Shown here one piece after another: positions 12,051 to 22,877 of a stretch of 42,447 nucleotides of DNA. Numbering within the stretch: the first letter of the stretch is position 1; every line of letters starts with the position of its first letter. This DNA comes from Bigelowiella natans CCMP2755 (Eukaryota; Protista; Cercozoa): positions 1 to 42,447 of the forward strand of contig ADNK01001696.1 of the NCBI GenBank assembly GCA_000320545.1, in the 5' to 3' direction. The notes beneath the pieces were generated by a model. It ran no database searches, had not been told where the DNA came from, and saw nothing but the letters and a program-made list of their open reading frames with translations. The translations under genes were made by a program, and so were the position numbers.

Positions 12051-12972
12051 ATCAGGAAATCCCTTGTTCGGCATCATCAGCCCGCTGATGCCGGATGTTC
12101 ATCTCGGTCCTGCCGAAACATGAAACGAACCGCACTTCGCCGCCCTCTTCCGATTTTGCCCAAGAGAAGGGATTTCGTAACGGTTCCCCCCTTTTCACGT
12201 GCACGCCACGCGTCGATTTTCGCGGTTACCCTTGTGGACCTCTTCAGGCGAATCTCTTCAGGATGGGCTGGAAATGGAAGTCGCCTTCATCGAGCTGAGC
12301 GCCTTTCCTCGGAATGCAACAGCTTGAAAAGCCACGAACGCTACTTTCGGAGAGCACGGAGGGGGTAGTGCCGGCACATGCGGCTCGTGGAAGTTCCGTT
12401 GGAAAGCAGGAAGTGCTTACCGCTCCGTTTCTACGTTCGAAATGACGACTCGCAAGTGCCCCGACTTCTTCTCGCAAGAAAGCCTGTCCGTTTCAACACG
12501 TGTTTGATAGATCTTCGGGGATCAATGGGCCTTGATACTAGAAAAACGAAGATTTACGAGGAAGAGAGTCTCTCATAGACAGAAATAGCCTGATTGTCGG
12601 CTTTCATCCGGCGAATTAACAAGTTATTTCGCTCCATGCTTGCTGAAAGGAGAGAAAGGCAGGTTCTTGTCAATGATGGGGTACAGGAATTCGTCGACAA
12701 AAAGAGAGTAGTCAAGTCTCAAAAGGGTATGTTCCAACTTTATTTAACTCATGTCCGCCCTCTCCCAGCCCCGCCTCCCTATCCCGTTTGGAGCAACATT
12801 AGCTCGAAAGGCGACGTGTGTTCTTGCTCATTGCCTACTGATTCGACGTTAGTTAGATCGGAATGTTGTCGTTCTTTAGTAAAGCTGTGTCTGCCTGTTC
12901 TCTTTACTTTCAAGCGTTCATTCAACATCTCCATTCTCCCCTTGGATGCCATCACAGCTTTTCTATGAGTTC

Positions 12973-13577
12973 ATGTTGCGGTCCACATCAATCATATTCC
13001 TTTCTACCGGGGCCCTTTTCTTGCTTGCTGTCGAGCGAGCGCATGGGCACAATTGGATGGAGTCGGCCTCAAGAGAAGTCGGCAAGGTACATGGAGAGTG
13101 TAGTTAGAACATCACTACGAGCGGTAATGGTATTACGAGTAATTGAGAAACTACTACTGTAGATACCTTCTGATGATACTAGGGTCAGCAACGTGGCCAT
13201 GTGCTCCGATTTTGACAATACAAAAGGAGTCACGATTCTGTGTTATATACATTGCTAAAAAAGGCATCGACTACGAAGCCGTTCAAGCAGCGAAGTCCGT
13301 GTTCAAACACCACTGAAAAAGACACCGCAAACGTCTCATTTAGAGACGAATTCTGTTGATTAATTGGATATAATGAGCAAGCACGCTCGGTTGAGATATG
13401 TACGACACAGAGGTTCTATATTTTGCTCCACAGGTCAATCGGATACCCATGCACAGCTTGGACCGGGTCAAAGAATGGCTGTAAAGGTGTGTGTCCCCTC
13501 TCAAATCCCAGTTCTGAGACTTTCGATATGTGAGTACGCTCAAACGCACATGTGTAGAAATTTGCTAATATAAAAAA

Positions 13578-13629
<52 letters not shown>

Positions 13630-13791
13630 TATATAAATATATATACATTGTAACAGTTCGCAACCGGCCACAATAAATTTCATTACTTCGCATTGTTCTC
13701 GAGCCAGGACCAGGGATATGCCTATTTTGATTCCTACTTGGACATGGTGCGCGAGGATGTCAACAATCTTATCATGCTGCATTCAAATATG

Positions 13792-13822
<31 letters not shown>

Positions 13823-16327
13823 TTATCTGCTCAAGTACTTTGTTGAATCATGATGTTTCCATGTCTCTATTTACCCAAGTAGTTGCCATTAACAATCTAA
13901 AGGTAAAAGATTACATAGGCTCTGCACCTTCGAGTGCGAACGTGGCAGGTTCTATGCAGATGAAACATAGACGCATGCGTGCAAACATCTATTTAGTATC
14001 TACGAATATATATATTTTCTCAAACCATCACACATGCCAACGTCACTGCACAAAAGCACAAAAGAGATACGACTACGGTTCGTTTGCTTGGATTCTGTTT
14101 GCGAGTTGCGAGTTGGCACCAACTTTCTCTGTTATTAGATATTCGTGCATTTCTTCAGCCTCGCCACCTCACCCATGTAATTTATAATCAGCTCAAAATC
14201 CACGACTCCATCGATGCAGTAAGTCATCTGCTTTCCTCTTTATTTGCAACTTTGATTTTAAAAGAAAAAGAAGGGGGGAGGTTGGGCAGTGCTTATAGAA
14301 CACATTTTCGCGCTTACGCGGGCGCACACAAGAATTGGCCACATACCGTAGAGTAATAGACACTATATCAAGTCAATTAAAATGGAAAGTTCGCACAAAA
14401 ATGTTGCAATCACAATTCATCAAATGGAAAAGGTCATTTCCACGCTGAATTTTATGAGTTTTGCGGTCTCGTTTTAGAACGAATCCGGCCTTATTTTCAC
14501 GCTGGAATAATGACTATTCAGGTCATGAGAACTGTCCTGATGGCGTCGGAGGCGTTGTGGACCCCAATGATAATGACTACTGCGATCATCCTCACTATAG
14601 CTCTATCGTGCATCGGTAGTAGTAGGCACCAAAGCAGTGCGTGGAACGTATTATTACATTAGATATTTGACGGCCACCAACATAGTAATCGGTATTTTGA
14701 GAAGTATCAACTGACAGTCGATGGTGTTGCTCCGTCAGATACACTTCGAGCTTGATTAGAGACGACCAGATGGTGAGCCATCTCACATTCCCTTCTGTCT
14801 TGGCTATATTTCGTGGGGGGACGAAAAACGGGATTGGTGGAATTTGAATGATCTGCTCTAGCAGTAGCGTCGATAAGATAATCACCGTAGATTTCCCGCG
14901 AATATCCACACCCTCTCCCTGTGACAGGTATTCTATAAATCTGCAAAATACCCATGGCTCCTTGGTAAATCTACTGTTTTTCGAAGACAACACTGGCGAT
15001 ACCCATTAGCGGGATTCCTTCTCTGCCCTCCCCCTTTTTTCCATAACGTCAATGCAATGGATTCTGCTAATCTCTCCATCCCAACTCCTTCTTGCACTCT
15101 CAAGGAGCGATTCGATATGAGAACTTGAATCATGCGCCAAACGACGCGGACGTCTTCTGCATGCCCGTCCCCTTCCAACAAGGTACGGTGGAAAGAGGGG
15201 CCGAATAAGAGCAGCCCACATCTGCAGATAGATGAGTAATCGGGAGATCGAAACGTATTCTCGCCGATGTATCTAACGAAGTTGCGATTGATGAGTTGTG
15301 TGCGTTACATGTATTGTGTGAGAGTGAGGGGGAGACAAAGAAAGAGAGAGAGGGAGGGAGAGAGAGAGAGGGGGGGGGGGGGAGGGGGGGGGAGGGAGAG
15401 AAGAGAGTGCTGGCATTGTGTGTCGTCGTCTGAGACATGTCGGCTAATAGGAAAAGGGCACCACTACATGCTGCATTGGATTTGGAGAGGTAAGCACCAA
15501 TTCCCTAGCATTTGGTCAATTTCATGAACAGCAGCGAGAAAGAAACAGCAAGGCACACCCATTACATGGTGCATTTTGGAGTTTCTATTTCTGAATATGA
15601 GGATCTGCGACCTGAGCCGATGAATCTGGCTTCGTCGCATCGCATGATTTCGTATCTCTCTGTTCTGGATTGAATCTGAAGACTTTACACTACTTTAAAC
15701 AGTCTTATCACGCGCACACAACAACTCTCTATATCACCAGGATACTATGATGTGGTGGACGTGCATGCTTTTGAAGAAGAGATTCCAGCCGATGAAATAT
15801 ATGGTAATGGCCTTACAAGAAATCGTCTTTACAAAAAACCTTATAACGACCAGCTTTTCCCTCTTTCAACTACCCCCCCCCCTCCTCTCTGTCTCTGTGC
15901 TGGTGGGCTTGGACATAAAAGGGAAGAAAACGAGTTCGTTCGAGTTTAATCGTGTCGATCACTGCCAGTTCTTCACTCCGCAGCGACTTGTCGGTTCCAT
16001 GTGGAGCTGATGATGATGATGATAGTTATTATGATGATGATTTAAAAATCGGAGCAATTCTGATGCTGGTATCGTCAATTTGAAGAGATAAGGGAAACTG
16101 TGAAAAGAATGCTACAAATGAACTGTTCCTACCTGCTCACACATTCTCCTTCTTTAGTGCGGTCACGACGAGCGAGCGGCTGCATGACAAAAGCGTTACA
16201 TGTTTGCTCCATCACCATTTCGTTAGGCTGGCCCAGCCAGAGAGGCCACAGAGACGGTTTCATCTTGCAAAAACGATGCTATCGAAGGTGATGATGAGAA
16301 GTGAAGTAACAGAAGCAAAACTACAAC

Positions 16328-16360
<33 letters not shown>

Positions 16361-17576
16361 GCTCTCTTGCAAACTTGCTCGCACGTGCATGTGCATTGTG
16401 GAGCGCCAAAAAACGTGTTTCTCATTTTGTACAAAAACCATCCTTTCTGCCGAGGCTGACAACACAGTCACCGTGAATCTCATGGCTATAAACGTCGTTC
16501 CAACACGCTTTGACGATACCAGCAGCCCGAAGGTCGAAATTATAACTGTAATTTCCTGCAAAACAAGCTTGCTTCGGTGTGAGATCTGCAGCGAATGTCA
16601 CATACCCGGTTGCCATTGAATAGGTGCTTCATCCGTTTGTCAATGGACCCTGGACACCATTTGAGTAGGGTCTTCGATGAAATTTTTCCCATAGTTTTCT
16701 TAGTGTTATTTGCGGTATGAGCTTTCATCATTTGAAGCAATGACGACATGCCTTTTCCTCCACGTACGATTGTGCTGCTTCTACCCTTAAAAAAAAACAG
16801 AGACGTTGAGGAGCACGGCTACTTCTTCAATCCCGATTATATCCAATATGTAATTTCGCCAACGTTGCCTTGCTATACGCAAATGCCATGAAAACAGTAC
16901 CTCGTGATCATGATTATCTCTGTCGCAGGCTGTATCTGGGTCTGCGTTTGAGCTAGAAGGTGCAAGAGGAATGAAATTTGCATGGGGGATGAGGAGGACA
17001 GCTCTGATTTCCCTATTTCGGGTAGAGGAATAGGTGTTTTCAACGCCATTGTGTTTCCAGGCACTGTAACGTCAACATCCATCGATTATGAGAGATTTTT
17101 GAATCGGTACTGCTCCAACAACACAAAAACAACAGAAGGAACTCTATGCGTCCATCTCCTTCCCTCTCTCACCACGTTCCCTTCCCCGCCCGCCCCCTGC
17201 TTCTGTCTTCATTTTGTAGCGGTGTGAGCTTCATACATCAAAAGAGCTGTAAAGGAGGTAGTGGGGAGGGGGGAGGGGGGGTGACAAGTAGCAGAACTAT
17301 GTCATTTATGAGGGATGAATTGATGAGGTCAACCGATGGTTCGTCTCTGGAAGACAGTAATTTAGAAAGTATTTGAAAAAATGTTTCTTTATCGAGCCTT
17401 TTAAAAGACTCCTCAAGCTTCCTTGGTTTGGACGGATCTTATCCCTTTTGCCACTTGTTGATTGTATTTTTGACAACGTCGGTGCTTATCCTCTTTCCAT
17501 TTCATTATCGGCACAGTCCCTACAAATGCCAGGACCTTCATTGATGCGACGAGTAATGTCCATTGCCTTAAACATG

Positions 17577-17618
<42 letters not shown>

Positions 17619-18119
17619 TGTTGTGTGTATGTGCACGTTTCACACACTAATACATATAGTCCGGTAGCCATATAAAGAAGAGAATTGTTTGTCGCGACTC
17701 AGTGTCTCATTTTCACATCATCATATATATATTGACTCAAAAGTGACAAAGTGTGAGTGTGTGTGTTTGAGCGTACTGAGGGGTTATTTTATGGCTATAT
17801 AAACAGATGCATGCCTGGCGAATAGCAATTGTCAAGGCGTCACACACTTGGTTCTAAATACATACAAACGGACCCTAGTGTTGTTGCTACTGTTCTATGT
17901 TGTCTGCACCGTCACCTCTCTGGATGTATCTGCGCAAAATAATGAAACACGGCTCTGGAGAGATAGGGAACACTAGGAAAAACACGTTGTTGAATATTTG
18001 TGATGAAAATGTGAAATTTAGGCTTTCGGAAACTCAAACTCGAGCATGGCATTTGTGGGAGAGCATGAGTACAGCAGTGTTTAGACATGTTCACTGAAGT
18101 TTTTTCCTTGCATCTCTCT

Positions 18120-18158
<39 letters not shown>

Positions 18159-18623
18159 GAATACTCAACGATTAATGGAATTTCCCATCTGCCAACACCC
18201 TTCTCCTCCTCCCCCCTCTTCAATAAAAGGTTTCGACTGTGCACAGGAGCGGAATTGGAAACGAAAACTGGCGACCAATGGAATGTTTATCACTACGACC
18301 CCCATCCAGCACCGACAGGGTAGCACGAATCATTTCCCAAATGTCCAATCTCTTTTCATGTGGTTCCATGTTGCTGATGTGTACGTGACACTGACATGTT
18401 CCTACTGGAATGCTCTCTACATAGGAGCGATTGAAATAATATCAACTTACAATGTCTCATTGATATACATACAAAATGTGTGTGTGCGTGTGTGTGTGTG
18501 CACCAGCATGATAGGCCCTTCTGAATGGACCGACAGCAATCATTTTGTTCTTCGGTAGAGCTAGGGCATCATCTATACATACACAGTCACATAGATAGTA
18601 CATAAATTGAATGATATTTCATG

Positions 18624-18660
<37 letters not shown>

Positions 18661-18664
18661 ATTC

Positions 18665-18704
<40 letters not shown>

Positions 18705-21700
18705 GAGTATCCTTTGTCCCAGATGACCCTGCTCATCCCGTGGCACTTCCAAACAGTAAGAAGGACGCTAACAAAAATTGAAACAACAGCCAAAATTAGA
18801 ATGGCAAAAAAATTAGAACAACACAAATTTCTCCGACAAGAGTCCTAAAAACCAAACTGAAGACCAAAAATAGCCGGAGTGACTAGTAGTAGATGAGGCA
18901 ACCGTGAAGAGTTATTTACTGGAACATGCTTGTGTTATTATCAGGCTGGTACCAAGACAACGGGAAGACCTTTGGGACAAGAAACGATGGATATAAGTAT
19001 GGTATGTGTCAGCAATGCACAAGCTGTTGTAGCCCCACATCGTTCGCACTCAAGTAGAGAGAAAGAGAGAGGGAGAGAATGGAGGCCGGGGGGGAAGAGG
19101 AAAGAGTGAGAACCATATTCCAAGGGAAATTTAGAGAGGAATTGTGTTATAAATATATTGAAAGGCTGGAAATGCAGAGTGGAGCATGAGATTGTTTTAA
19201 GCAGCTACGATCAAGACAATACCGGCCCTGAAACAGGTACGAGATTACGCTCTCCATAAGAGCTTCCGCTTTGTTCGCCAACAACAAAAACAACATCGGG
19301 CCCCAGCCGTACCGTACGGGGCAAAGTCCATTCAGTCTCTCTTCATCTTTTGCCAGGGAGCTACTGTTTGAGAGAGTGATTCGTGATCTTTTGGATGTGC
19401 ACAGGGCAGACAGTGAAGAATGAGGTTAACAAGCTTTGCAATGGAACCAACAACTACTGGGAGGCCAAAGTGCCAAATGGCCTCTATGCAGTCACAATAT
19501 ATCACGTGAGTGAATGAAGCATCTTGCCTAGCGATTGGCTCGAATATCAAACTAGCGGCGCTCTTGAATTCCATGCTATTTTCCCTCGCGAAATGGCTTC
19601 TGCCTCGTAATAGTAGAATTGAATAGATGCTTGCCGCAGCAAAAAAAAAAAAAATCGTACGTGCTCATTCTATGCAAATAAACCAGGGAGGGAGTGAGTT
19701 TGGCGCGGATGGCTGCTACGTGGAAGGGCACAGAGTCCGAAGGGACAATGGGCGAGACCAGGTGGGTATATCCGCCTCCGCACCGTTTGATCTTTTAGAA
19801 ATAACATCAATTGATTCTCTTAATTCTCACTGTAAGCACCATCCACCTCTTTCTTCTTCTTCTTCTTCTTCTCCTTCTTCTTCTTCTCTATATTTATCTG
19901 CAAGGCTCGTACCTTTGCCTTTCGAGTCAACGTCAGGGACGGTCGTCTGACTCTAGGGCCAATGCTTACACCTGGCCTCCCTGCGGGCGGAACCAGAATT
20001 GAGCCGCAATACACCAAGGAGTGTGCCCCCACCTCCTGGATTGTGATGCATCGCATCGCCAATGGCCTTCCTCCCGCTATGATGCCGAGCCACCCCACTG
20101 GCAGCCAGGCGTGGAAACAGCTAGAGCTCGGAAGCAGCGACAGCGGGGAGGGCGTCGGCTACGTCAAGATTGCCCTTCCCGGGATGCCCTCTGCTCCTTT
20201 GCCAAGCATGTTTCCGGGGCTGCTATACACGCCTATGTGCACTGACTATTGGTTTTACATGCCGGGCGCGGCGTGTCAGGACGGGGGGCGGGCCAAGTCG
20301 AGCAAGAATCAGCACATCTTTGACCTGTATGAGCGTTGGGTGCTTGATAAGCCTGGGGTGGAGGACTCGTCGGAGAGCGGGGCAAATACCCTGCGAGGAT
20401 GGTGGCCGAGCGATAAACGCAACCACGGCGCCATTGTCTCTGTGAGCGATACGCCTTGCACGGGGGAAGGAGGTAGTCAGCACGTCGGCGCTACTACGAT
20501 TGATTCATTTTTGCCGCCACCCTCTCACCCTCTTACATTTCTACTTTCACCTCTCTGCTGCCTCATATTGCTGTTCTGCAGGTTGTCCTAGCGGCACGGG
20601 GGATCACATCTGCGAAGTAATCCACAAGACCAATCCCTGTTTATCTCGCAATGAGGACATGTGCCCGCATATCGTCGACTGTAAGGGGGCCAAAGGCAAG
20701 TACGTGCGCGTGCAATTGCGGGGGCAAGATCGCCACGCCTACTTCAAGCTGAACGCGTATCGGCGGAAACCGAGGCTGTCATCCCCAGTCAAGGGGCAGC
20801 CAAAACTATGCTATGGTCATGCTACCAGCCAGTGAGGGAAAGTGGGGAGGAGGGGGGACGAGGAGGCAGGGAGGAAAATAGAAAGAGAGAAAAAAAGACG
20901 TGCAGAGAGAGAGAGAGAGCAATAGATACCTTTAATGGCGTTGTAAGTAAGCAACAGAATACTGTCTTTGAAGAAATATTCGATATTTGCTTCGTGGTGC
21001 GTCCATAATTTCCCCCTGGCATTGTTGGCAAACAGCTCTCCAACCTCGTAAGGCGACGTTTACCTTCCCTGAGAAGCTCATTAGCACAGATCCTACGGAC
21101 CCCATCTTCTACTCAACTTGCTACTACGTGCAAAAGAAGGTCAGCCTGAGTGCGCATGCCAAATGACGCGTTCCCATCGTCGTTTTTTGAAGATGCATAC
21201 TGAAGATGAATACTCTCCGGCATCACTTATGTATGTGCTGATTTGTTCATTACAGATTGACTGGCGTTCAGTGCCTGCAGCGCCACATGAAGATGATGGA
21301 TGGTTGAAAGGCTTTTTTCATTTCCTTTACTTCTAGCGCCATCATCATTACCTTTCATCGGAAACAATACGACATAACCGCATCTTCATCTAACAGGGTC
21401 TTTGAAGGAAGCTGTCTTGATTGTGATAGTTTCAACGCTAATGTAAATGGTGAGCGACCAATGCCTTCATGGATGACGCACGCAAGCTTATACACACGAT
21501 CAGCTTTTGTTCGAAATGCGTATCAGCCGAGATCCCACATCCGCTCTCTATTTTTTTGTACAGAAATTGACGAGTTAGGGACCCCGAACTGGTTCTTTGA
21601 CAACAACTGCATCGATTGTACCAAAAAGCCTTCGTTTCAAGGTGGTGTCTTGCTTTCTGTAAAGATAGCATGAGTTCCATCAATGTCTAAGTAGAATTTC

Positions 21701-22877
21701 AGCTTGTCATACTTCCCCCCCCCCCCCCCCCTTTATTTTCCCTCTGTACTATGGACATAAAATGGTAGGCAGTGTGAATGCTCCTCCGGATAGCAGCAGC
21801 GATCCTCTTCCTAGCCGAAATTACTCGACACATGGCGATGGGCTTTATTGGTATCAAGAAGACGAAGAGGGAAGCGGCATTATGACGACAGTGCGCACCC
21901 ATAGCGTAGCAGCCTTTGGCGCACTCCTGTACTTTTCCATCTCTTTTCAAATTCTCATCCAAAAGACAAGCGGTGGTGGCGGAGAAGGGACCGCTGTGCT
22001 TCATGTAAGCTTGAAATTTGGTTGAACTCATATGCTCAAGTTTCGTCTGGGGACGGGAGGGTACATGTTGCTCTCACTCCTAAATCTTCTTTTTCCTTTG
22101 CAGATGATCGCGGGAGGCAGTGGGCCTTCAAATTTGCCATTGATTCTCATTCCTCCAAACTCGCGCAGCTTGAGCTACGTGATCTCGGATTTGGCCGACA
22201 TGTCTCGAGATGTTAATTGCCTCTCTCCTCCGCTCCCTTTGAATGAGATTGTCCATGTGCGGGTCGAAGTAACGACTGATGGTCGCCTCCGCGCGTACGT
22301 TGACTACTCTTAAGACACATTATTTTCGGTGCTATACGAGGTGTTGATGTATCTCCATTTCTCTTGTTTTCTTGTGTTTTATCGCTGCTCAGGTTTCATG
22401 GTTCGAAGCTAGTCTGCGACGTCGTGGCGTCCTCCTCCCCCGTAAGCTCTGCCTCTCTCCCAACGTCCTGGCCTGGAGAACTCTTCCTTGGTTCCCCCCA
22501 CCACCCCCCTGCCAGTCATGCTGAGTTACTTGCCGTTTACTATGGAGGGAACGGAGCGAGGATGCTAATGGGGCCGACTAAAACCCAAGTGGCCGCTAAC
22601 AAGCTCCTTGCTGACGACCTCATCACACAGAAATTGTTTCGGTTGACTTTGGATATCAAACTTAGCTCCCCGCCCTCTCCGTCCCACCAGTCCGGCCAAT
22701 GGGCGAGCATCTTCCAGATTACCAATGAGACTGGGTTGGGGTGGGGTCCACGCGCACGGAATCCCATTATTATGGTGATGCCTGACACGTATCGGTTGGC
22801 CGTGAGGGCTTCGAATGACGTCACTTTGGATCGAGGATGCAATCCAGGTGAGTATTCGTTATTGTCTTGATTATGAA

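What the first reader, a model, noticed from the sequence alone, without database searches (positions are those of the whole stretch)
12973..15803. Hidden His-brace LPMO-like domain, possibly an unclassified copper-protein family, split over 12 small exons
Seen in sequence: a 25-aa signal peptide ending A-H-G places His at mature position 1 (codon 13048-13050, HNWMESASR). A second His lies in KFATGH (13669-13671). The ~195-aa domain ends with GHHYMLHWIWRGYYDVVDV. All 12 exons join in frame at GT-AG junctions. Established: AA10, AA15, AA16 and AA17 LPMOs share His1 after the signal peptide (HG....P.SR), a second His in a W/F-x-T-A/G-x-H loop, and a closing G.H.....W...F/Y-Y..-D-V strand pair carrying the axial aromatic. 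Inference: this is a copper His-brace LPMO-fold protein. HN instead of HG, the very short W-to-YYD loop (WRGYYD) and the long internal Cys/His-rich insert do not fit the families I know, so it may be a distinct protist LPMO-like family.
Basis: partly seen in the sequence, partly recalled or inferred. Interest (0 to 1): 0.9.

Follow-up and report, generated by a model that had tools for sequence, protein, structure and literature searches.

The report
New LPMO-like histidine-brace protist family
A real, expressed, badly annotated gene of the alga Bigelowiella natans starts with a secreted domain that has the fold and hallmark residues of copper "histidine-brace" enzymes (LPMOs). It belongs to a large protist family that no database names, so it is a good candidate for a new LPMO-like family, but its chemistry is untested.

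Summary
Spliced transcript contigs from three studies support the ATG at 12973 and ten of the twelve proposed GT-AG exons.

The signal peptide ends A-H-G, so His (13048-13050) is mature residue 1. The organism is Bigelowiella natans. Its public model (Bigna1 76183) is wrong at both ends, which hid the domain.

A search of 1.84 billion proteins found 158 cluster representatives. They come from chlorarachniophytes, a choanoflagellate, an amoebozoan, a ciliate transcriptome and marine metagenomes. His1, Trp3 and His46 (ATGH) are invariant. Tyr of G-Y-x-D is 97% Tyr and 3% Phe. His1 always follows a hydrophobic stretch with a signal-peptidase motif.

Neither Pfam, NCBIfam nor PDB sequences match. 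AlphaFold models of two homologues are confident. In both, the best structural matches are X325 (Z 7.0-7.1) and AA15 (Z 6.5-6.9). Another 11-12 LPMO chains reach the top 50, and nearly all align their His1 to the model's His1. These Z values are modest, and Foldseek finds nothing significant.

Verdict: probably a new LPMO-like histidine-brace family. Copper binding and activity are untested.

This scan has already flagged paralogues of this family elsewhere in the same genome (s1-772672, s1-744412).

The parts
12600..12726 (+). 5'UTR exon (extends upstream of 12600); holds an in-frame TAG at 12709-12711
   Evidence: Joint 12726|12958 GT..AG in contigs of X1, X2 and X12; sequence read
12958..13086 (+). 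Exon 1. ATG at 12973; signal peptide 12973-13047 (MLRSTS...AVERAHG); His1 codon 13048-13050; HNWMESASREVGK
   Evidence: The -3/-1 residues are A and G, which fits the family-wide signal-peptidase rule
13264..13294 (+). Exon 2 (ASTTKPFKQR): family motif AST..P(C/F)..R
   Evidence: Joints 13086|13264 and 13294|13434; tblastn of P0003
13434..13486 (+). Exon 3 (QSDTHAQLGPGQRMAVK). Holds the near-invariant His29 (13448-13450), Gln31 and Gln36
   Evidence: Contig piece 13434-13484; conservation
13657..13746 (+). Exon 4 (FATGHNKFHYFALF...). Invariant His46 codon 13669-13671, the candidate second brace histidine
   Evidence: Contig pieces 13655-13745; His is 100% in 91 sequences
13903..13948 (+). Exon 5 (VKDYIGSAPSSANVA): conserved DY...AP motif (Tyr75 99%)
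   Evidence: Joint 13746|13903
14192..14218 (+). Exon 6 (QNPRLHRC): conserved R.H (His93 83%)
   Evidence: Loose end at 14189 and joint 14218|14522
14522..14615 (+). Exon 7 (HENCPDGVGG...HPHYSSIVH): Cys/His-rich stretch, shared with other chlorarachniophyte members
   Evidence: Contig pieces 14522-14614; paralogue and homologue alignments
14739..14772 (+). Exon 8 (YTSSLIRDDQM)
   Evidence: Inferred from the 71 nt the contig holds between exons 7 and 10, the depth bins, AG/GT sites and an open frame
14928..14964 (+). Exon 9 (VFYKSAKYPWLL): family motif V.Y...YPW
   Evidence: Chosen over the rival exon 14891-14927 by homology to P0003 and P0006
15105..15182 (+). Exon 10 (AIRYENLNHAPNDADVFCMPVPFQQ)
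   Evidence: Contig pieces 15104-15180 and joint 15182|15451
15451..15489 (+). Exon 11 (KGHHYMLHWIWR): conserved G.Y/H-I-V-H-W-x-W strand
   Evidence: Joint 15182|15451
15741..15803 (+). Exon 12 (YYDVVDVHAFEEEIPADEIY). Tyr191 codon 15743-15745, the candidate axial tyrosine
   Evidence: Depth bins; the first Tyr of GY.D is 97% Tyr / 3% Phe
15922..15989 (+).
   Evidence: The only exon that fits the 68 nt in the contig and the depth bins; homology
16227..16287 (+). Exon 14. If the following intron (16288-16467) is retained, the frame stops after ...AIEGDDEK, giving a single-domain isoform
   Evidence: X1/X2 contigs cover 16227-16315 and 16370-16530, with the masked (CA)n run between them; the X12 contig starts at 16466 after 28 nt of other sequence, which indicates a spliced form
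16468..22813 (+). Rest of the same gene: many 27-65 nt exons and then larger ones, collinear with Amorphochlora P0003 residues about 255-1042. This part is the subject of the separate finding s1-774229
   Evidence: Joints; tblastn of P0003 and P0006

Best explanation
Window 12973-15989 encodes the N-terminal domain, about 225 residues after signal-peptide removal, of a long secreted multi-domain protein of Bigelowiella natans. The domain belongs to a large, unnamed protist family that I call the 'HNW domain' here.

I read it as a mono-copper histidine-brace domain with the LPMO/X325 beta-sandwich fold, working as follows:
- Signal peptidase cuts after A-H-G and frees the amino group of His1.
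- His1 (amine and side chain) and His46 (ATGH) hold one copper ion.
- Tyr191 (G-Y-Y-D, start of the last strand) sits under the copper.
- The copper site does oxidative chemistry, most likely on a glycan, to which the downstream modules would tether it.

Shown: the gene model and its expression, family-wide conservation of these residues and of the cleavage motif, and a confident predicted fold in two homologues whose best matches are LPMO-type proteins.

Inferred: cleavage at His1, copper binding, the roles of His46 and Tyr191, and any substrate.

I give about 0.75 that it is a copper histidine-brace domain at all. Of that, about 0.45 is for oxidative action on a polysaccharide and about 0.3 for copper handling or redox without glycan cleavage, as in X325. 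The confidence entered here (0.6) is for the whole account as written, with oxidative chemistry of some kind as the preferred function.
For: Gene model and expression:
- Spliced contigs from three studies.
- An in-frame stop lies upstream of the ATG.
- All junctions are GT-AG and in frame.

Family:
- 158 cluster representatives at E<=1e-3 and 40 at <=1e-10.
- His1, Trp3 and His46 are 100% conserved in 91 domain sequences. His29 is 92%, and Tyr of GY.D is 97% with the rest Phe.
- Residue -1 is A/G/S in 133 of 135 homologues, -3 is a small or aliphatic residue, and a hydrophobic stretch lies upstream.
- The window protein keeps every conserved residue.
- Cys20 and Cys195 are either both present (51 sequences) or both absent; only one sequence has one without the other. 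This ties the N-terminal segment to the Tyr-bearing last strand.

Fold:
- The AF2 models of P0042 and P0009 have pLDDT above 90 over most of the domain.
- VIA-align against 48,161 PDB representatives puts LaX325 6ibh first both times (Z 7.1 and 7.0). AA15 5msz scores Z 6.9 and 6.5 (rmsd 2.7-2.8 A over 116-118 residues).
- AA9, AA10, AA11, AA13 and AA16 chains fill 13-14 of the top 50 rows. Nearly all of them (3uam is the exception) start at the model's His1 and at the chain's own first residue or its brace-His precursor number.
- In both models the conserved Tyr lies 11 residues before the end of the AA15 alignment.

Other:
- Protein-language-model features place the domain nearest clusters named 'SCE4755 family polysaccharide monooxygenase' (0.89, 188 of 256 shared features) and a haptophyte LPMO_10-bearing cluster (0.88).
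- Some relatives carry a plastocyanin-type copper domain or a Reeler domain upstream, and a PAN/apple domain downstream.
Against: - Structural Z values of 5-7 are in the range the tool says is common for models without a true match, and many Ig-like adhesin domains score the same.
- Foldseek found nothing at E<=0.001 in the PDB or BFVD.
- No sequence or profile link to any known LPMO family.
- The language-model score is under 0.9, which the tool rates as a lead only.
- His1 to His46 is a much shorter spacing than I recall for AA9/AA10/AA15. The long insert lies after the second His rather than before it, so the substrate face cannot be the same.
- Other near-invariant polar residues (His29, Gln31, Gln36, Asp137, Asp194, Asp197) could form a different site.
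- X325 shows that a histidine brace does not imply polysaccharide cleavage.
- I could not measure distances in the models.
- Nothing here shows metal binding.
Confidence: 0.6

Rival explanations
1. It is an X325/Bim1-type protein. It has a histidine-brace copper site on an LPMO-like fold, but it binds, hands over or senses copper (or relays electrons) at the cell surface and does not cleave polysaccharides.
For: - LaX325 (6ibh) is the single best structural match for both models.
- The His1-His46 spacing is short and there is no long loop before the second His.
- Extra conserved Asp and His residues could supply a further ligand, as the Asp does in X325 (the X325 description is in PMC13353379).
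- Some long relatives are membrane-anchored: a C-terminal hydrophobic segment was detected in 7 of 28 relatives with an internal His and in 2 of 11 with an N-terminal His. Some also have cytosolic WW tails.
- Some relatives carry a cupredoxin domain.
Against: - The closing strand motif (G.Y/H-I-V-H-W-x-W-G-Y-x-D-C-x-D-V) looks more like what I recall of AA10/AA15 than of X325 (from memory, not tested).
- The window protein and its relatives carry downstream modules with lectin-like or PAN/apple folds, which suit glycan targeting.
- A profile search of PDB sequences, which include 6ibh, gave nothing.
Confidence: 0.3
2. It is a metal-free beta-sandwich binding or adhesion module. The residues conserved at its N-terminus would serve folding or ligand binding rather than copper binding.
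For: - The fold matches are no stronger than those to bacterial adhesin and pilin Ig-like domains.
- Foldseek's weak top hits are p53-like and Ig-like sandwiches.
- No family model or metal evidence links it to LPMOs.
Against: - A His that is invariant at the exact residue after a signal-peptidase site in about 135 divergent sequences is hard to explain without a need for a free N-terminal histidine. This holds even where that site lies 200-650 residues into the protein.
- The second invariant His and the Tyr/Phe-only position fit a brace.
Confidence: 0.12
3. The domain is an artefact of a wrong gene model: chance open frames stitched together.
For: - The public JGI model differs from mine.
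- Two small exons (8 and 9) rest on inference.
Against: - Spliced contigs in three independent studies carry the junctions.
- Every exon aligns in order to Amorphochlora and other homologues.
- Four paralogues in the same genome share the layout.
Confidence: 0.02

Closest known systems
X325 LPMO-like copper proteins (LaX325, PDB 6ibh; fungal Bim1 type)
   Same: - Best structural match for both homologue models (Z 7.1 and 7.0; 123-126 residues aligned; model His1 on chain residue 1).
- Small beta-sandwich with an N-terminal His after a signal peptide.
- Some relatives are held at the membrane.
   Different: - No sequence or profile similarity.
- The HNW domain is about 80 residues longer, with a partly helical insert after the second His.
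- It sits at the head of a protein of more than 1,000 residues rather than before a GPI anchor.
- Whether an Asp ligand is present is unknown.
AA15 LPMOs (Thermobia domestica TdAA15A, PDB 5msz) and AA10 LPMOs (Pfam LPMO_10, PF03067)
   Same: - AA15 is the best LPMO match in both models: rank 4 and rank 2 overall (Z 6.9 and 6.5, rmsd 2.7-2.8 A over 116-118 residues, His1 on His1).
- Several AA10 chains score Z 5-5.8.
- The N-terminal H-x-x-hydrophobic-x-x-P-x-R pattern and the closing aromatic-Y-x-C-x-D-V strand resemble what I recall of AA10/AA15 motifs.
   Different: - PF03067 does not match the window or any of the 65 family members scanned.
- The second residue is Asn or Thr, never Gly.
- His1 to the second His is 45 residues, against roughly 85-90 as I recall for AA10/AA15.
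- The long insertion comes after the second His, not before it.
AA11 LPMOs (PDB 4mai, 7p3u)
   Same: - Z 5.1-5.4 in both searches, with the highest sequence identity among the LPMO rows (17-19%).
- A short His1-to-second-His distance (from memory, about 60 residues).
   Different: No profile match. Different N-terminal motif and different closing strand.
Bacterial 'SCE4755 family polysaccharide monooxygenase' clusters (name given automatically in the ESM Atlas)
   Same: Nearest clusters by protein-language-model features (0.89; 188 of 256 features shared).
   Different: - No NCBIfam model of that or any related name matched any of 65 family members.
- The score is below the tool's 0.9 line.
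- Those clusters are bacterial proteins of 217-240 aa, and no paper in the library mentions the name.

Membership tests
LPMO-type histidine-brace proteins (generic) | His is the first residue of the mature protein, exposed by signal-peptide cleavage | tested here: met
   By sequence only. The window has MLRSTS...AVERAHG|HNW, with A at -3 and G at -1. In 135 homologues, -1 is A/G/S in 133 and -3 is small or aliphatic, with a hydrophobic stretch upstream. Cleavage itself has not been observed.
LPMO-type histidine-brace proteins (generic) | A second conserved His completes the brace | tested here: met
   His46 (ATGH) is 100% conserved in 91 domain sequences and invariant in alignments A2 and A3. 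Its position next to His1 in 3D could not be measured.
LPMO-type histidine-brace proteins (generic) | An axial Tyr or Phe from a C-terminal strand lies under the copper | tested here: inconclusive
   The first Tyr of G-Y-x-D is 97% Tyr and 3% Phe. In both models it lies 11 residues before the end of the AA15 alignment. No residue-level superposition or coordinates were available.
LPMO-type histidine-brace proteins (generic) | Immunoglobulin/fibronectin-like beta-sandwich of LPMO topology | tested here: met
   Two models have X325 and AA15 as their best LPMO-type matches, with 13-14 LPMO chains in the top 50 and nearly all registered His1 to His1. Z is only 5-7.1, and Foldseek is not significant.
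LPMO-type histidine-brace proteins (generic) | Binds one Cu and oxidises a polysaccharide with O2/H2O2 and a reductant | not testable with these tools
   Needs protein expression, EPR or ITC, and product analysis.
AA10/AA15 (Pfam LPMO_10, PF03067) | Match to the family profile above its gathering score | tested here: not met
   No hit on exon pieces even at E<=10. A six-frame scan of the whole genome hit only another locus, at E 0.12. None of 65 family members matched.
AA9 (Pfam PF03443) | Match to the family profile | tested here: not met
   One of 65 members matched at E 0.065, far below the cut-off.
X325 | Sequence relationship to the solved member; Asp as an extra copper ligand; GPI anchor | tested here: inconclusive
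   A profile search of all PDB sequences, which include 6ibh, found nothing at E<=10. It is the best structural match. Conserved Asp residues exist, but their place in the structure is unknown. No GPI signal was examined.
SCE4755-type bacterial polysaccharide monooxygenase-like proteins (NCBIfam naming) | Match to an NCBIfam model | tested here: not met
   No such model matched any of 65 members at E<=1. The only link is a language-model feature similarity of 0.89.

The most novel reading that the evidence does not exclude
The HNW domain is a new auxiliary-activity family of copper LPMOs that is widespread in marine and freshwater protists (chlorarachniophytes, choanoflagellates, amoebae, environmental lineages).

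In many members the enzyme would be made from a membrane precursor. A mid-chain signal peptide would be cut to create the catalytic N-terminal histidine, and the same polypeptide would carry its own electron-donor module (Reeler, cupredoxin, or DOMON in a paralogue noted by this scan). Together these would form a self-contained cell-surface oxidative system acting on algal or prey glycans.
Probability: 0.3. Interest if true: 0.9.

Novelty: new variant of a known kind. Interest (0 to 1): 0.75.

Why it matters
LPMO families have been found mostly in fungi, bacteria, viruses, arthropods and oomycetes. A family centred on free-living protists would extend copper-dependent oxidative glycan chemistry, or X325-like copper handling, to major marine microbial eukaryotes.

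It would also give names to proteins in the 158 sequence clusters found here, which databases now list as hypothetical or leave unnamed.

The family offers a sharp, testable signature: H-N/T-W directly after a signal-peptidase site, A-T-G-H, and G-Y-x-D.

In about half of the relatives that site is internal, behind a Reeler or cupredoxin domain and a hydrophobic hairpin. If the cut happens there, it would be an unusual way to make an N-terminal catalytic histidine.

For B. natans, the case shows that tiny exons (27-94 nt) and a wrong public gene model can hide a whole domain.

Tried and rejected
Searches that found nothing:
- Pfam on eight stop-free exon-bearing stretches: nothing relevant.
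- PF03067 in six frames over the whole genome: no hit in the window.
- ESM Atlas with the half-domain in P0001: no usable hit, poor model.
- Foldseek against the PDB (two models) and BFVD: nothing at E<=0.001. AA13 and fusolin appear only at E about 0.05-0.08.
- Family profile against all PDB sequences: no hit at E<=10.
- NCBIfam on 65 members: no LPMO-type model.
- Upstream exons for the Reeler-type N-terminal region seen in relatives: none in the window.
- Literature searches for LPMOs in Bigelowiella or phytoplankton, AA18, histidine brace plus AlphaFold, SCE4755, and JGI id 76183: no description of this family. AA18 is the unrelated CelOCE enzyme.
- The last homologue search added no new named relatives.

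Readings I dropped:
- The 210-238 nt loose ends at 12756 in two runs do not occur anywhere in the window. I take them as coming from another locus, not as an alternative 5' exon.
- Exon 9 at 14891-14927 (ISREYPHPLPVT) was rejected in favour of 14928-14964, on homology.

I used exons by reference, the database protein P0001 (which contains exons 1-5 as joined by JGI), and natural homologues. Frames across junctions were checked only in local scripts.
Full report
**What is in the sequence**

The window is eukaryotic DNA with short exons, (TA)n and (CA)n runs in the introns, and about 45% G+C. At 12973 an ATG opens a 25-residue signal-like peptide that ends A-H-G. The next codon, 13048-13050, is His, followed by N-W-M-E-S-A-S-R. 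The motif K|FATGH has its His at 13669-13671. The motif GHHYMLHWIWR|G|YYDVVDV spans 15451-15489 and 15741-15803.

**Is the gene model real?**

I laid four public runs on 12600-18500. Three of them, from three different studies, hold assembled contigs that skip introns with GT..AG ends at these places:
- 12726|12958, an intron in the 5'UTR
- 13086|13264
- 13294|13434
- 13746|13903
- 14218|14522
- 15182|15451

Pieces of the same contigs cover exons 3, 4, 7 and 10. Spliced contigs can only come from RNA, so the gene is expressed. The one raw-read RNA run added only seven reads.

In the main spliced form a TAG at 12709-12711 is in frame with the ATG and has no ATG after it. The ATG at 12973 is therefore the start.

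The tool did not list the two small exons between exons 7 and 10. The contig holds 71 nt there, and the depth bins place about 28 nt before 14767 and about 42 nt after it. That left two candidate pairs. The family motif (D.RV.Y...YPW) decides for 14739-14772 and 14928-14964.

The same reasoning gives exon 13 at 15922-15989. All fifteen exons I defined have AG/GT sites and join in frame. His1 to YYDVVDV is 197 residues.

After exon 14 (16227-16287) the runs show two forms. In one, the intron 16288-16467 is kept and the frame stops after ...AIEGDDEK. In the other, a spliced form runs on. The spliced form is collinear with a 1,327-residue Amorphochlora protein as far as about 22813. So the domain heads a long multi-domain protein, and a single-domain isoform is also possible.

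**Organism and annotation**

A stop-free stretch holding exon 4 retrieved one database protein, JGI Bigna1 76183 of Bigelowiella natans. That model starts at an upstream ORF, so the signal peptide appears internal. After exon 5 it reads into introns. The domain was therefore hidden in the public annotation.

I worked with exons by reference, with this database protein (which holds exons 1-5 correctly joined), and with natural homologues.

**The family**

An exhaustive HMMER search with the JGI protein found 158 cluster representatives at E<=1e-3 and 40 at <=1e-10. The named ones are hypothetical proteins of these organisms:
- the chlorarachniophytes Amorphochlora amoebiformis, Lotharella globosa and Norrisiella sphaerica
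- the choanoflagellate Diaphanoeca grandis
- the amoebozoan Rhizamoeba saxonica
- a Euplotes transcriptome

The rest come from marine metagenomes and metatranscriptomes. B. natans itself has at least four paralogues, on contigs C1624, C1412, C3480 and C1315.

Conservation in 91 domain sequences:

| Residue (mature numbering of Amorphochlora P0003; the window's Tyr is 191) | Conservation |
|---|---|
| His1 | 100% |
| Residue 2 | Asn 92%, Thr 8% |
| Trp3 | 100% |
| Arg9 | 90% |
| Pro19 | 97% |
| His29 | 92% |
| Gln31 | 91% |
| Gln36 | 96% |
| His46 | 100% |
| Tyr75 | 99% |
| Tyr192 of G-Y-x-D | Tyr 97%, Phe 3% |
| Asp197 | 98% |

The window protein keeps all of these.

Positions 20 and 195 are Cys in both places (51 sequences) or in neither; only one sequence breaks the rule. 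That indicates a disulfide tying the N-terminal segment to the last strand. The chlorarachniophyte clade, including this gene, has replaced the pair with Phe and Val or Ala.

**The cleavage site**

In 135 homologues the residue before His1 is A, G or S in 133. Residue -3 is small or aliphatic, and a hydrophobic stretch lies just upstream. This is the signal-peptidase rule, and it is kept whether the site is N-terminal or internal.

In 62 of the homologues the His lies more than 200 residues into the protein. Of those 62:
- 61 start with Met;
- 36 also have an N-terminal signal-like stretch;
- 39 have two hydrophobic segments in the 90 residues before the His.

Several carry a Reeler domain above Pfam's cut-off in the N-terminal part. 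One carries a plastocyanin-type copper domain. Some end in a membrane segment and a WW domain. The window gene has no such upstream part. Such strict conservation of a peptidase site in front of one histidine argues that a free N-terminal His is what the family needs.

**Fold**

Pfam, NCBIfam and a profile search of PDB sequences found no family for the domain. I folded two natural homologues with family alignments:
- P0042: 533 residues, 42% identical to the half-domain in P0001.
- P0009: 343 residues, 46% identical to the same part.

Most ten-residue blocks of the domain have mean pLDDT above 90 in both models. Foldseek found nothing significant in the PDB or among viral models.

The exhaustive structural aligner, run against 48,161 PDB representatives, gave these results:

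| Match | P0042 model | P0009 model |
|---|---|---|
| LaX325 (6ibh), ranked first in both | Z 7.1 | Z 7.0 |
| TdAA15A (5msz), rmsd 2.7-2.8 A over 116-118 residues | Z 6.9 | Z 6.5 |
| LPMO-type chains in the top 50 (AA9, AA10, AA11, AA13, AA16 and the two above) | 14 | 13 |

Nearly all of these alignments begin at the model's His1 and at the chain's own first residue, or at the precursor number of its brace histidine. In both models the conserved Tyr lies 11 residues before the end of the AA15 alignment.

The tool warns that a best Z of 7-8 is common for models without a true match, and Ig-like adhesin domains score about the same. I therefore put the weight on the repeated enrichment and the His1 registration, not on Z alone.

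Protein-language-model features of the P0042 domain give a further lead. They lie nearest clusters named 'SCE4755 family polysaccharide monooxygenase' (0.89) and a haptophyte cluster that carries LPMO_10 (0.88). Both scores are just under the tool's 0.9 line.

**How it most likely works**

Signal peptidase frees His1. His1 and His46 then bind one copper, with Tyr191 below it, on a beta-sandwich of LPMO type.

The layout differs from the known families. The two histidines are only 45 residues apart, and the long, partly helical insert comes after the second His. The second residue is Asn or Thr, not Gly. Several further polar residues are nearly invariant.

The downstream parts of relatives include a PAN/apple fold and a weak concanavalin-like lectin match, which would suit a glycan target. 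X325 shows, however, that such a site can serve copper handling instead (PMC13353379).

My estimates:
- about 0.75 that it is a copper histidine-brace domain;
- within that, about 0.45 for oxidative action on a polysaccharide and about 0.3 for an X325-like role;
- about 0.12 for a metal-free binding module;
- about 0.02 for a gene-model artefact.

**Novelty**

I found no paper or database family describing this domain. AA18, the newest LPMO family named in the literature I read, is the unrelated CelOCE enzyme.

This scan has already flagged paralogues of the same family on other DNA of this genome:
- s1-772672, an unannotated LPMO-like family;
- s1-744412, a membrane precursor with a mid-chain signal peptide and DOMON domains.

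I saw those notes only after reaching the same reading. I rate the finding a new variant of a known kind: a new LPMO-like family with an unusual precursor architecture in many members.

Noticed in passing
L001 (G000:C595:10964-11074, minus strand): Another gene of the same genome has an exon reading ...GDYVLSWRWDAEQTKQVWMQCSDVRI. It is the only place in the genome that Pfam LPMO_10 touches (model positions 148-183, E 0.12, 18.8 bits). It looks like the closing strands of a different LPMO-like protein, not of the HNW family.
   Followed up: partly
Homologues P0004-P0006, P0010, P0015, P0027, P0037, P0044 and others (not in the window): In 62 of about 135 relatives the signal-peptidase site and His1 lie 200-650 residues into the protein. 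They sit behind an N-terminal signal peptide, a Reeler or plastocyanin-like domain and, in 39 of the 62, a pair of hydrophobic segments. This suggests a membrane precursor that is cut mid-chain to create the N-terminal histidine.
   Followed up: partly
window 12120-14350: The public JGI model Bigna1 76183 (P0001) starts at an upstream ORF (12120) and reads into introns after exon 5. The true protein is therefore absent from protein databases.
   Followed up: yes
window 16288-16467: This intron holds a (CA)n run and appears to be retained in contigs of two runs but spliced out in a third. Retention ends the frame after ...AIEGDDEK and would give a secreted single-domain isoform. The downstream contig also has 2-5 times the depth of the upstream one.
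   Followed up: partly
G000:C1624:13840-14551; C1412:57399-59503; C3480:32318-35997; C1315:18534-19064: Four paralogues of the HNW family lie in the same genome, all with A|HNW. Two have far fewer introns: C1412 holds residues 62-630 in one open frame, and C1624 holds residues 14-179 in one exon.
   Followed up: partly
P0042 residues 341-440 (homologue, not the window): A confident second domain with a PAN/apple fold (Z 7.0 to plasminogen and HGF N-terminal domains and to the Toxoplasma MIC4 apple domain) follows the HNW domain.
   Followed up: no
window 13564-13651, 13783-13830, 15328-15409: Long (TA)n, (CA)n and G/A-rich simple repeats sit inside introns 3, 4 and 10. The reads tool masks them.
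   Followed up: no
window 12756: Contigs of two runs have 210-238 nt of sequence joined at 12756 that occurs nowhere in the window. They probably come from another locus that shares the C/T-rich stretch.
   Followed up: partly
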